Positions 15,785 to 16,830 of a stretch of 64,000 nucleotides of DNA are shown piece after piece (positions within the stretch are counted from its first letter, which is position 1; each line of letters opens with the position of its first letter). The notes below the pieces were generated by a model. That model saw nothing but the letters and a program-made list of their open reading frames with translations. It was not told where the DNA came from and made no database searches. The position numbers and the translations under genes were made by a program. The stretch spans positions 124,001-188,000 of the IMG/VR virus record IMGVR_UViG_3300032562_000003. The stretch is one strand, 5' to 3'.

Positions 15785-16606
15785 ATGAACAATAACCCGC
15801 TAAGACAGTACTTCAGAAGACCTGCTGTTTACCTAAAACTCCCCTCAGGAACCACAAGCTACTCAGAGGACGTGATAAACATTCCAGTAACCGGCGAATT
15901 ACCAATCTATCCGATGACTGCTATTGATGAAATTACAGCCAGAACTCCGGATTCGTTGTTTAACGGTACTGCAATTGCTGAATTAATAAAAAGCTGTGTA
16001 CCTGACATCAAAGATCCATGGGCTATTAGTAGCAGTGATTTAGATGCTATCCTCATCGCAATTAAGTCTGCTTCCAACGGTGATCAATTGGACATAGATT
16101 CGATCTGTCCAAAATGTAACGAACTTTCTCCGTACGGCATCAGCTTAGTTGGTATATTGTCTACCCTTAAGGCAGGGGATTACAATAAGGAATTTGAAGT
16201 AGGTGATCTAAAAATTAAGTTTAGACCGTTGGTTTATAAAGAAATGAATGAAGCTTCTATAGCTCAGTTTGAAATGCAAAAACTGTTTGCCTCTATGGAA
16301 AATATGTCAGAAGAGGAAAAAAATAAAATAGGTGGTGATGCACTTGAACGGGTAACGTTGTTGACTATGAAATTATTAAGTTTAGGTATTGAATATATAG
16401 AAACACCAGAAATCAAGGTACAAGAAAATGAGTTTATTCTAGATTTTCTCAAGAACTGTGATCGAAATACTTTTACTTCTATTAGAGACTACGCTACAGA
16501 ACTTAAGAAAAGTTCCACACCACAGCCATTAAAGATAAAATGTGATAGCTGCGGACACGAATACGAGCAAGATTTCTCATTGAACCCTTCTGATTTTTTC
16601 GGCTAA
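15785..16606 (+). CDS. baseplate hub subunit / tail assembly chaperone (gp26-like)
   Basis: NPLRQYFRRPAVYLKLPS, IYPMTAIDEI, two CxxC motifs (CPKC, CDSC), ends SDFFG. Confidence 0.75.
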   Translation: MNNNPLRQYFRRPAVYLKLPSGTTSYSEDVINIPVTGELPIYPMTAIDEITARTPDSLFNGTAIAELIKSCVPDIKDPWAISSSDLDAILIAIKSASNGDQLDIDSICPKCNELSPYGISLVGILSTLKAGDYNKEFEVGDLKIKFRPLVYKEMNEASIAQFEMQKLFASMENMSEEEKNKIGGDALERVTLLTMKLLSLGIEYIETPEIKVQENEFILDFLKNCDRNTFTSIRDYATELKKSSTPQPLKIKCDSCGHEYEQDFSLNPSDFFG

Positions 16607-16648
16607 AGCTTCTACGCTCTAAACCCGAAGAGATTCAGAAGCTACTAG
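16594..16648 (+). promoter_or_regulatory. putative programmed -1 ribosomal frameshift signal
   Basis: In-frame heptamer T TTT TTC (16594-16600), 6-nt spacer, stem AGCTTCT (16607-13)/AGAAGCT (16637-43) with inner CTCT/AGAG. Confidence 0.7.
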
Positions 16649-16830
16649 ATGAGTATGAAAAAGACGTAGCGGGTATACGCAAATCTGCACTTACTATGGC
16701 ATGGTACATGCGCGGTGGCGCTTCATATGAGGACATCCTCAACATGTCTATAGAGGAAAGAAAGGCTATCAACGATATAATTGATAGCAACCTAGAAACT
16801 ACAAAGAAATCCCAGCTACCATTCTTCTAA
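16594..16830 (+). CDS. gp51-like hub assembly protein in the -1 frame, no upstream start; probably made as a 348-aa frameshift fusion
   Basis: Open from 16594 (after TGA 16591): FFRLKLLRSKPEEIQKLLDEYEKDVAGIRKSALTMAWYMRGGASYEDILNMSIEERKAINDII...LPFF*. The first ATG is at 16696 and has no SD. Not in the ORF track. Confidence 0.7.
   Translation, partial: FFRLKLLRSKPEEIQKLLDEYEKDVAGIRKSALTMAWYMRGGASYEDILNMSIEERKAINDIIDSNLETTKKSQLPFF

What the first reader, a model, noticed from the sequence alone, without database searches (positions are those of the whole stretch)
16591..16830. Probable programmed -1 frameshift joining gp26-like and gp51-like genes (lambda G/GT-style)
SEEN: the gp26-like ORF ends GAT TTT TTC GGC TAA, giving an in-frame X XXY YYZ heptamer T TTT TTC (16594-16600). 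The -1 frame opens exactly there, with TGA at 16591 just before it, and runs 78 codons with gp51-like content (AWYMRGGASYEDILNMSIEER). It has no ATG until 16696 and no SD. Six nt after the heptamer a hairpin begins: AGCTTCT/AGAAGCT plus CTCT/AGAG, extendable by CTA/TAG. Slippage would give a 348-aa fusion alongside the 273-aa product. KNOWN: long-tailed phages use a -1 frameshift in tail-chaperone genes beside the tape-measure gene (lambda gpG/gpGT), whereas T4 genes 26 and 51 are treated as separate genes. INFERENCE: this pair, which sits divergently next to the tape-measure gene, is a G/GT-type chaperone system in a T4-like lineage.
Basis: partly seen in the sequence, partly recalled or inferred. 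Interest (0 to 1): 0.85.

Follow-up and report, generated by a model that had tools for sequence, protein, structure and literature searches.

The report
Frameshift site in phage tail-chaperone gene
A jumbo T4-related phage makes a short and a long version of its gp26-type tail/hub assembly chaperone from one gene by a conserved -1 slip on T TTT TTC; the signal is real, but this kind of system was described for T4-like phages in 2022, so this is a new member of it.

Summary
The gp26-like ORF (15785-16606) ends GAT TTT TTC GGC TAA. The -1 frame is open only from 16594 and runs 78 codons to 16830 with no start codon for its first 34 codons. A hairpin starts 6 nt after the heptamer.

Comparative evidence makes a programmed -1 shift very likely:
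- The in-phase T_TTT_TTY heptamer and a 55-78-codon -1 extension occur in all 24 distinct relatives of the window protein, in 2 Emmerichvirinae and in 80 of 80 cyanophage-like loci.
- The codon before FF varies (D, H, Y, S, R, A) but always ends in T.
- T4-type phages that carry a separate gene 51 have non-slippery TTC TTT and no extension.
- About 20 natural single-ORF proteins of 319-351 aa fuse the same two parts in exact register.
- The hairpin shows compensatory changes within the window's clade.

The extension is colinear with the C-terminal tail of T4 gp51. So this gene encodes both the gp26-type short form and the gp51-type long form. The divergent neighbour looks like a tape-measure protein carrying a lysozyme domain.

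Novelty is low. Vladimirov, Gautam and Davidson (Virology 2022) identified these genes as tail assembly chaperones of T4-like phages. Not settled: ribosomal versus transcriptional slippage, and any homology to lambda G/GT.

The parts
15785..16606 (+). gp26-like gene, 0-frame product of 273 aa (the short, TAC-N-type form). It has a PF12322 T4_baseplate domain with two CxxC pairs.
   Evidence: ORF and translation. Pfam PF12322 at 3e-18 and PHROG 150 'baseplate hub'. The four cysteines are invariant in alignment A5. It is the only PF12322-family gene in the 64-kb window.
16591..16593 (+). TGA stop in the -1 frame immediately before the heptamer. With the 0-frame stop, it confines any productive shift to 16594-16603.
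   Evidence: '-1 open from -10'.
16594..16600 (+). Slippery heptamer T_TTT_TTC, in phase X_XXY_YYZ (Phe-Phe codons 271-272).
   Evidence: It is invariant (TTTTTTC, or TTTTTTT in three phages) in all 35 related loci, in 2 Emmerichvirinae and in 80/80 cyanophage-like loci. It is absent from T4-type phages that have a separate gene 51.
16601..16606 (+). 6-nt spacer GGC TAA, which contains the 0-frame stop codon (16604-16606).
   Evidence: spacer of 5-6 nt in 13 of 15 clade members.
16607..16645 (+). Downstream stem-loop. The outer stem is 16607-16613 / 16639-16645 and the inner stem is 16617-16620 / 16629-16632. It is the probable frameshift stimulator.
   Evidence: Minimum-free-energy structure. 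In 15 clade sequences 88% of cells are paired, against 41-55% when the 3' partners are slid. Six pairs show changes on both sides, and 0/500 shuffles reach the observed values. RNAalifold finds the same stem.
16594..16830 (+). -1 frame extension of 78 codons plus TAA, corresponding to the gp51-type C-terminal helical domain of the long form. It has no start codon before 16696.
   Evidence: Homologous peptides occupy the same position and frame in all relatives. Variability is highest at third codon positions in this frame, including the start-less part. The same domain sits at the C-terminus of natural 319-351-aa single-ORF proteins. hhalign to the gp51 tail gives P = 6e-5.
12507..15689 (-). 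Divergent neighbour of 1060 aa: a probable tape-measure protein with a C-terminal lysozyme domain, and the presumed client of the chaperone.
   Evidence: Pfam Phage_lysozyme at residues 824-946. Gly/Ala-rich hydrophobic segments. Weak similarity to the N-terminus of RaK2_00088 and to the centre of T4 gp29. RaK2_00088 is annotated as similar to a tape-measure protein. Language-model neighbours that carry a family are all tape-measure families, at lead level only. The orthologous neighbours are abundant virion proteins in CBB and PA5oct.

Best explanation
One gene makes two proteins. Most ribosomes translate 15785-16603 and stop at TAA 16604, giving the 273-aa gp26-type short form. A minority of ribosomes, with tRNA-Phe in both the P and A sites on UUU UUC and paused by the stem-loop that begins 6 nt downstream, slip back one base onto U UUU UU. 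They then continue in the -1 frame (…SDFF-RLKLL…) to 16827. This yields a 348-aa long form whose extra 76 residues form a helical domain equivalent to the C-terminal tail of T4 gp51.

By analogy with lambda gpG/gpGT, and from the assignment of T4 gp26/gp51 as hub or tape-measure assembly chaperones, the shared N-terminal domain would coat the tape-measure-like protein encoded divergently next door. The rare C-terminal domain would link that complex to another tail or hub component.

Shown here: the signals, their conservation, coding constraint in the -1 frame, the existence of the fused architecture in nature, and the relation to gp26 and gp51. Inferred: that the shift is ribosomal, its efficiency, and the binding partners.
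For: 1. **Shift window.** It is only 10 nt (16594-16603) and consists of the heptamer plus GGC.
2. **Conservation of the heptamer.** T_TTT_TTY is in phase near the 0-frame stop, and the -1 frame stays open 64-74 codons beyond that stop, in all 35 loci (24 distinct, down to about 26% aa identity). The +1 frame closes within 7-88 nt. The same holds in Vibrio phage VmeM-32 and Aeromonas phage AS-yj, with shorter extensions of 55-59 codons, and in 80/80 cyanophage-like loci.
3. **Selection at the RNA level.** The residue before FF varies (D, H, Y, S, R, A) but its codon always ends in T. In the window's own genes only 2 of 36 FF pairs are slippery.
4. **Negative control.** T4, Stupor, ABTNLsp5 and ValerieMcCarty02, which encode gp51 separately, have TTC TTT or no FF, no heptamer and no extension.
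5. **No conserved start.** The first possible start falls at codon 4, 5, 21 or 35 depending on the lineage, and at codon 35 in the window. The start-less part is nevertheless under coding constraint.
6. **Natural fusions.** About 20 cluster representatives of 319-351 aa carry PF12322 followed by the extension in one frame, with junction …xFRxx(L/I)(L/I)… aligned to the window's DFF|RLKLL. Their contigs carry a separate short paralogue beside them.
7. **Hairpin.** It lies 5-6 nt downstream in 13 of 15 clade members, at -9 to -20 kcal/mol. It is the most stable window of its gene in 12 of the 15 and within the best 2% in two more; the exception is L011 (9%). Compensatory changes are present.
8. 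**Relation to gp51.** gp51 = PF12322 domain plus tail, and the tail profile matches the extension profile.
9. **Virion proteomes.** The neighbour is an abundant virion protein in CBB (29 peptides), while the gp26-like protein is not in that virion table. PA5oct shows the same pattern.
Against: - No experiment or proteomic junction peptide is available.
- T_TTT_TTC is not among the best-characterised high-efficiency bacterial heptamers (my own knowledge).
- In more distant jumbo phages the downstream structure is weak or differently spaced: 121Q, RaK2, XbC2, RAS14 and Xoo-sp13 have weak structures, and Atu_ph07 has a spacer of 18 nt.
- In the window alone, the 80-nt fold is not better than shuffles.
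- Some relatives have an ATGA or GTGA start-stop overlap that could allow coupled re-initiation.
- Homology of the extension to the gp51 tail rests on a modest profile score (probability 65%).
- No fold similarity to any solved tail assembly chaperone was found.
Confidence: 0.72

Rival explanations
1. Transcriptional slippage. RNA polymerase adds one extra U on the T6 tract, so a fraction of mRNAs encode the fused protein directly. The protein outcome is identical to that of a -1 ribosomal shift.
For: The conserved element is a homopolymer run: T6 in more than 100 loci and T7 in three. An inserted U gives the same …DFFRLK… product. [quoted passage not shown] I could not read that paper, so I do not know whether this is what it means.
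Against: Six T is short for efficient slippage by bacterial RNA polymerase; known cases use about 7-9 or more (my own knowledge). The run is held at exactly six followed by C-G rather than drifting longer. The conserved, covarying hairpin lies downstream at the 5-6-nt spacing typical of ribosomal -1 signals. Known slippage-stimulating hairpins lie upstream in the nascent RNA (my own knowledge). The extension is always in the -1 frame and never +1, except in one outlier with an 11-nt insertion.
Confidence: 0.15
2. Two separate proteins. The downstream ORF is translated on its own, by re-initiation after the gp26-like stop or from an internal start, as most database annotations imply. The heptamer is then only a by-product of a conserved Phe-Phe.
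For: Public records annotate small separate genes there: 121Q_595, XbC2_245, NVP2275O_435, SCTP2_87 and CBB_249. Some relatives have ATGA or GTGA overlaps. FF is also conserved in T4 gp26.
Against: In the window there is no ATG, GTG or TTG for the first 34 codons. Those codons are conserved and show third-position variation. Start positions differ between lineages. The third base of the preceding codon is always T whatever the amino acid. FF is non-slippery precisely where no extension exists. Single-ORF fusions show that the two parts belong to one polypeptide.
Confidence: 0.06
3. No function. The extension is a decaying remnant of a once-fused gene, or a sequencing or assembly indel in a single continuous gene.
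For: A one-base error in a T run is a common artefact. One cyanophage record (S-SCSM1) does have an aberrant arrangement.
Against: Six independent metagenome assemblies give the identical sequence. More than 100 loci from isolates and metagenomes share the T6 arrangement and an intact -1 ORF under purifying selection.
Confidence: 0.02

Closest known systems
T4 gp26 / gp51 (baseplate-hub, or 'tape measure protein', assembly chaperones; Pfam PF12322). Vladimirov, Gautam and Davidson, Virology 2022;566:9 (PMID 34826709; not readable here).
   Same: The same protein family. The short form corresponds to gp26. The long form corresponds to gp51, that is, a PF12322 domain plus a C-terminal tail, colinear across the junction. 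Both T4 proteins are listed as hub assembly chaperones (PMC3004832) and as 'tape measure protein assembly chaperone' in the phage Stupor record. One citing paper says T4-like phages carry a short gene and a long fusion gene (PMC10885494). Another says poly-T slippery sequences occur in TAC-N genes of T4-like phages (PMC12846349).
   Different: T4 uses two divergent genes and has no heptamer. The window uses one gene plus a -1 shift. The extension is longer here (78 aa against about 50). The gene sits beside the portal and tape-measure-like genes and the endonuclease VII / gp46-gp47 genes, not beside genes 25 and 27.
Lambda gpG / gpGT and the conserved tail-assembly-chaperone frameshift of long-tailed phages (Xu, Hendrix and Duda 2004; my own knowledge).
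   Same: Two products share an N-terminus through a -1 slip on an X_XXY_YYZ heptamer near the end of the short ORF. The gene is adjacent to the tape-measure gene. The short form is expected to be in large excess and absent from virions.
   Different: No sequence-family or fold similarity to G-like chaperones was detected. The protein is twice as large and has a Cys4 zinc-ribbon-like motif. The gene is divergent from the tape-measure-like gene instead of lying upstream on the same strand between the tube and tape-measure genes. The heptamer is T_TTT_TTC rather than G_GGA_AAG (my own knowledge).
gp26-like genes of Rak2-like, Asteriusvirus and other jumbo phages (121Q, RaK2, CBB, PA5oct, Atu_ph07, XbC2, SCTP-2) and of cyanomyophages and Emmerichvirinae.
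   Same: The same heptamer, frame and extension. Synteny with the tape-measure-like gene and the portal gene is the same in the Rak2-like phages.
   Different: About 26-35% aa identity. The 0-frame stop lies 10-40 nt after the heptamer. The downstream hairpin is not conserved across these groups. None of the records examined annotates a frameshift.

Membership tests
T4 gp26/gp51 family (Pfam PF12322, PHROG 150) | Significant match to the family profile over its whole length | tested here: met
   PF12322 at 3e-18, profile positions 38-218 of 219. PHROG 150 at 4.8e-17. The BFVD fold search of a fused relative returns T4-like baseplate hub assembly proteins at E = 1e-14.
T4 gp26/gp51 family (Pfam PF12322, PHROG 150) | Two conserved cysteine pairs (CxxC … CxxC) | tested here: met
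   CPKC and CDSC in the window. The four Cys columns are invariant in A5. They are present in T4 gp26 and, with one pair as adjacent CC, in gp51.
T4 gp26/gp51 family (Pfam PF12322, PHROG 150) | Long form carries the gp51-type C-terminal tail (listed as PF28602 for gp51 homologues) | tested here: inconclusive
   hhalign of the extension profile against the gp51 C-terminal profile gives P = 5.9e-5, probability 65%, and a colinear alignment. BLASTP gives E = 0.017. The PF28602 model is not in the Pfam copy on hand.
Canonical -1 programmed ribosomal frameshift signal | X_XXY_YYZ heptamer in the correct phase inside the overlap of the two frames | tested here: met
   T_TTT_TTC at 16594-16600. The overlap is 16594-16603.
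Canonical -1 programmed ribosomal frameshift signal | Stimulatory RNA structure 5-9 nt downstream, supported by covariation | tested here: met
   The spacer is 6 nt. In 15 clade sequences 88% of cells are paired, 6 pairs change on both sides, and 0/500 shuffles reach the observed values. This is not general outside the clade.
Canonical -1 programmed ribosomal frameshift signal | Signal and trans-frame ORF conserved in relatives, and the downstream ORF lacks its own conserved start | tested here: met
Canonical -1 programmed ribosomal frameshift signal | Trans-frame protein actually produced at a defined efficiency | not testable with these tools
   This needs a reporter assay, a western blot or mass spectrometry.
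Lambda G/GT-type tail assembly chaperone | Gene lies between the tail tube and tape-measure genes, upstream of the tape-measure gene on the same strand | tested here: not met
   The gene is adjacent to the tape-measure-like gene (12507-15689, - strand) but transcribed divergently from it. No tube gene is adjacent.
Lambda G/GT-type tail assembly chaperone | Sequence or fold similarity to known tail assembly chaperone families | tested here: not met
   No tail assembly chaperone family appears in the Pfam, NCBIfam or PHROG hits. The PDB sequence search found nothing. For the confident model (pLDDT 91), the best Foldseek hit against the PDB has E = 0.21 and TM about 0.1.
Lambda G/GT-type tail assembly chaperone | Binds the tape-measure protein, is required for tail assembly and is absent from virions | not testable with these tools
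   Indirect evidence only. The gp26-like protein is not in the CBB virion table although its neighbour is abundant there. PA5oct shows the same pattern. The T4 literature lists gp26 and gp51 as chaperones.
Transcriptional slippage site | Long homopolymer run (usually 7-9 or more) whose length is the selected feature | tested here: inconclusive
   The run is T6 in more than 100 loci and T7 in three. This is short but not excluded. No RNA data are available.

The most novel reading that the evidence does not exclude
The T_TTT_TTC-G site may be one of the most deeply conserved recoding signals in phages. It would be ancestral to the whole T4 superfamily (cyanomyophages, Emmerichvirinae and several jumbo-phage families). 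The two-gene arrangements (T4 genes 26 and 51, and tandem short plus long genes in some uncultured phages) would be derived from it by duplication, leaving relic heptamers behind. The window's clade would have added a dedicated covarying hairpin stimulator. If the 2022 paper did not cover the jumbo-phage lineages or the hairpin, this evolutionary picture and the stimulator would be new.
Probability: 0.2. Interest if true: 0.5.

Novelty: new member of a known kind. Interest (0 to 1): 0.3.

Why it matters
- **Annotation.** It corrects the annotation of a core tail-assembly gene. In every public record examined, the long form is missing and its C-terminal domain is either called as a spurious 40-98-aa 'hypothetical protein' or not called at all.
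- **Mechanism.** It shows that the short-plus-long chaperone logic of long-tailed phages is kept across the T4 superfamily by interchangeable means: a frameshift, tandem genes or divergent genes.
- **Experimental use.** It provides a compact natural heptamer-plus-hairpin cassette with covariation data for testing U_UUU_UUC frameshifting in bacteria.
- **Limits.** It does not open a new field, because the family-level idea is already published.

Tried and rejected
- **Direct family searches with the 78-aa extension.** Pfam, PHROGs and NCBIfam gave nothing, even at E = 10. Only PHROG 18291, built from truncated 121Q-type ORFs, matches the 121Q peptide.
- **BLASTP of the extension against T4 gp51.** Not significant. 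Profile-profile comparison was needed.
- **A narrow gp51 HMM built from Tevenvirinae.** It could not even detect the window's own gp26-like gene. It was replaced by a broad family HMM.
- **Search of solved structures, by sequence and by fold.** No chaperone relative was found.
- **Promoter and terminator scan, and T4 late-promoter motif search around the locus.** Uninformative.
- **Rfam and tRNA scans of the window.** Empty.
- **The primary paper (Virology 2022;566:9).** Not held in the library. Its content is known here only through two citing papers, whose summaries differ in emphasis.
- **A +1-frame arrangement as a general alternative.** I considered this after seeing cyanophage S-SCSM1. 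I rejected it because 80/80 related loci are in the -1 frame and S-SCSM1 carries an 11-nt insertion.
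Full report
**The observation**

- ORF 15785-16606 (+) encodes 273 aa and ends …N P S D F F G stop, written GAT TTT TTC GGC TAA.
- T_TTT_TTC at 16594-16600 is in the X_XXY_YYZ phase.
- In the -1 frame a TGA lies at 16591-16593. The frame then runs 78 codons (FFRLKLLRSKPEEI…LPFF) to TAA at 16828-16830.
- The ORF list shows that the first ATG, GTG or TTG in that frame is at 16696.
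- A productive shift can therefore occur only within 16594-16603. It would give a protein of 270 + 78 = 348 aa.

**Is the single sequence beyond chance?**

Taken alone, it is only suggestive.
- In-phase X_XXY_YYZ heptamers are common: 64 occur in the window's roughly 19,800 ORF codons.
- An 80-nt fold is no better than dinucleotide shuffles, with z = -0.47.
- Against that, the 50-nt window holding the hairpin is the most stable of all such windows in the gene (-12.5 kcal/mol against a mean of -5.6).
- This genome prefers non-slippery codons for Phe-Phe: only 2 of 36 FF pairs are T_TTT_TTY.

**What the genes are**

- The 0-frame product belongs to Pfam PF12322 'T4_baseplate' (3e-18) and PHROG 150. 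It is the only such gene in the window.
- The surroundings are those of a T4-superfamily jumbo phage. They include a gp20-type portal interrupted by an intein, gp46/gp47-type nuclease subunits, a gp55-type late sigma factor, and gp5-, gp25- and gp6-type baseplate proteins.
- Six IMG/VR contigs of up to 259 kb carry the identical gene.
- The nearest cultured relatives, at 26-35% identity, are jumbo phages: Atu_ph07, Phosso, 121Q/PBECO4, RaK2, CBB, PA5oct, XbC2 and SCTP-2.

**Comparative test of the frameshift**

I collected 35 loci, 24 of them distinct: the window's own clade from IMG/VR (51-64% identity) and nine distant jumbo phages.
- Every locus has T_TTT_TTC, or T_TTT_TTT in two, in phase 10-40 nt before the 0-frame stop.
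- Every locus has a -1 frame open for 64-74 codons past that stop. The +1 frame closes quickly.
- The trans-frame peptides are clearly homologous: FFRxxLLxxxPEEI … WYMRGGxSYEDxLNMSxxER ….
- The amino acid before FF varies (D, H, Y, S, R, A), yet its codon always ends in T. That is selection on the RNA, not on the protein.
- The same arrangement holds in two Emmerichvirinae, Vibrio VmeM-32 and Aeromonas AS-yj, and in 80 of 80 cyanophage-like loci.

The negative control is clean. T4, Stupor, ABTNLsp5 and ValerieMcCarty02 encode gp51 as a separate gene. They write the homologous position as TTC TTT, or lack FF. They have no heptamer, and gene 25 follows directly.

**Is the second ORF translated on its own?**

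This is unlikely.
- The first possible start codon lies at codon 4, 5, 21 or 35 depending on the lineage, and at codon 35 in the window.
- The start-less part is nevertheless conserved. It shows the third-position excess of variation expected for coding sequence in that frame: 0.28 / 0.25 / 0.46 for codon positions 1 / 2 / 3 (whole extension).
- Some relatives do have ATGA or GTGA overlaps, so coupled re-initiation cannot be excluded for them. It cannot explain the window.

**Natural fusions**

A profile of the extension was searched against 1.84 billion representative proteins and found 366 hits.
- Most hits are 40-98-aa fragments, that is, mis-called small ORFs.
- About 20 representatives of 319-351 aa carry the domain at their C-terminus. 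All ten that I scanned have PF12322 in front of it.
- In alignment A5 these single-ORF proteins run colinearly with the window's 0-frame product up to the invariant F. They continue …FRxx(L/I)(L/I)…, which is exactly where the window would read DFF|RLKLL after the slip.
- Two of their contigs carry a second, shorter PF12322 gene immediately upstream. This is a tandem two-gene solution to the same need.
- In the long genes the junction is non-slippery (AGT TTC AGA, CGT TTT CGT).

**Relation to T4 gp51**

- PF12322 covers T4 gp26 (residues 1-206) and also T4 gp51 (residues 1-201). This leaves gp51 with a tail of about 48 aa.
- gp51 homologues are listed with an extra domain, PF28602.
- A profile of the extension aligns with a profile of that tail at P = 5.9e-5 (probability 65%).
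- With relaxed settings the alignment is colinear from LLxxPEEI ~ LLxNPDEI through NMSxxERxxIxxII ~ MIPxERxxxLxLIEK.

**The hairpin**

- In the window's clade a stem-loop starts 5-6 nt after the heptamer in 13 of 15 sequences, at -9 to -20 kcal/mol. It is the most stable window of its gene in 12 of the 15 and within the best 2% in two more; the exception is L011 (9%).
- On the ungapped alignment the outer six pairs are almost invariant.
- The inner pairs change on both sides in several lineages.
- Overall 88% of cells pair, against 41-55% when the 3' partners are slid. No shuffle out of 500 reaches the observed pairing or covariation. RNAalifold agrees.
- The window uses a slightly different register for its inner stem.
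- Outside the clade the picture is mixed. PA5oct has a good hairpin at 6 nt and Atu_ph07 has one at 18 nt. Several Rak2-like phages have nothing convincing.
- Cyanophage-like loci have a small hairpin about 10 nt downstream, with apparent compensatory changes (not analysed further).

**The neighbour**

ORF 12507-15689 (-) encodes 1060 aa.
- It has Ala/Gly-rich helical and hydrophobic segments and a C-terminal lysozyme domain.
- It shows weak similarity to RaK2_00088, which is annotated as tape-measure-like, and to the central part of T4 gp29.
- Its language-model neighbours that carry a family all belong to tape-measure families, at scores that count only as leads.
- Its counterparts in CBB and PA5oct are abundant virion proteins. 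The gp26-like proteins are not reported in those virions, as expected for a chaperone and its client.
- I regard 'tape-measure protein' as likely but inferred.

**Structure**

- AlphaFold2 on the natural fusion P0126 with alignment A5 gives a confident model (pLDDT 91, pTM 0.87). The extension forms four helices.
- Foldseek finds only T4-like hub-assembly proteins among viral models.
- It finds nothing among solved structures.
- So the family 'works like' lambda G/GT, but I could not show that it is related to it.

**What is already known**

- The T4 tail review lists gp26 and gp51 as hub assembly chaperones (PMC3004832).
[quoted passage not shown] I could not read that paper.
- One citing paper says T4-likes carry a short gene and a long fusion gene instead of frameshifting (PMC10885494).
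- Another cites it for poly-T -1 slippery sequences in TAC-N genes of T4-like phages (PMC12846349).
- A GenBank record already names gp26 and gp51 'tape measure protein assembly chaperone'.
- The kind of system is therefore known. The window adds an uncultured jumbo-phage member. It perhaps also adds the covarying hairpin and the breadth of conservation.

**Mechanism and verdict**

The most likely mechanism is -1 ribosomal frameshifting on U_UUU_UUC, stimulated by the downstream stem-loop, producing a minor long form.
- Transcriptional insertion of one U at the T6 tract would give the same protein and is not excluded. I rate it lower because the run is short and fixed in length, and because the conserved structure lies downstream at ribosomal spacing.
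- Independent translation and an artefact are both unlikely.
It is a new member of a known kind, of moderate-to-low interest.

Noticed in passing
window 9415-12474 (-): The T4-type portal gene (Portal_T4, 1.5e-94) is interrupted by an intein with an HNH endonuclease domain (Intein_splicing plus HNH_3), giving a 1019-aa ORF.
   Followed up: no
window 35156-54049 (+): A single giant ORF of 6297 aa lies downstream of the gp6-type baseplate wedge gene. It is possibly a fibre or 'hairy tail' protein, as in Rak2-like phages.
   Followed up: no
window 12507-15689 (-), about residues 735-810 of the protein: The tape-measure-like protein carries a Gly/Ala-rich tandem motif (GGALGAAGHAAGG, repeated) just before its lysozyme domain. 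The gp5-type hub protein at 27399-31190 matches only the N-terminal part of the gp5 profile. So the lysozyme seems to have moved to the tape-measure-like protein.
   Followed up: partly
window 17975-18682 (-), 7551-8186 (+), 17388-17960 (-): Free-standing homing-endonuclease-type genes (NUMOD3/GIY-YIG-like and HNH) and a PDDEXK nuclease flank the locus.
   Followed up: no
L039 (Synechococcus phage S-SCSM1, NC_070962) 2150-2380: This is the only outlier. The heptamer is present, but an 11-nt insertion after it closes the -1 frame and puts the gp51-tail-like ORF in the +1 frame. The record annotates that ORF as a 54-aa 'baseplate hub assembly catalyst'. All 80 related IMG/VR loci have the ORF in the -1 frame. 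It could be a sequence error or a real variant.
   Followed up: partly
L044 411-1295 (short paralogue beside fused gene P0141): In a phage that encodes the long form as a separate gene, the short paralogue still ends AAT TTT TTC ACT…. This is an in-phase T_TTT_TTC whose -1 frame stops at once, and it looks like a relic of a frameshifting ancestor.
   Followed up: no
L004 (T4) gene 26, 3' end; alignment: T4-type gp26 proteins end …FF-ELL, …FF-KVM or …FF-KIMS. This resembles the post-slip sequence FF-RxxLL of the frameshifting lineages. It hints that T4 gp26 derives from a truncated long form. This is speculative.
   Followed up: no
L046-L125 (cyanophage-like IMG/VR loci), about 10 nt after the heptamer: A small hairpin of 5 bp with loop AUAU (GAUCC/GGAUC, GGUCC/GGACC, GGUUC/GAACC, AGUCC/GGACU) shows apparent compensatory changes.
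   Followed up: partly
public records: L002 3013-3222, L003 3019-3222, L034 3343-3540, L035 3442-3636, L126 2367-2543, L001 3115-3237: The extension is annotated as a separate small hypothetical protein with arbitrary starts, or not at all (RaK2, PA5oct). No record examined annotates a frameshift. PHROG 18291 and most of the 366 protein clusters found are such fragments.
   Followed up: yes
window 16838-16865 (+): An inverted repeat AGAGAGAA … TTCTCTCT with a 12-nt loop, followed by ATTT, lies 8 nt after the extension's stop codon. It may be a weak terminator closing the transcription unit. The terminator scan did not report it.
   Followed up: no
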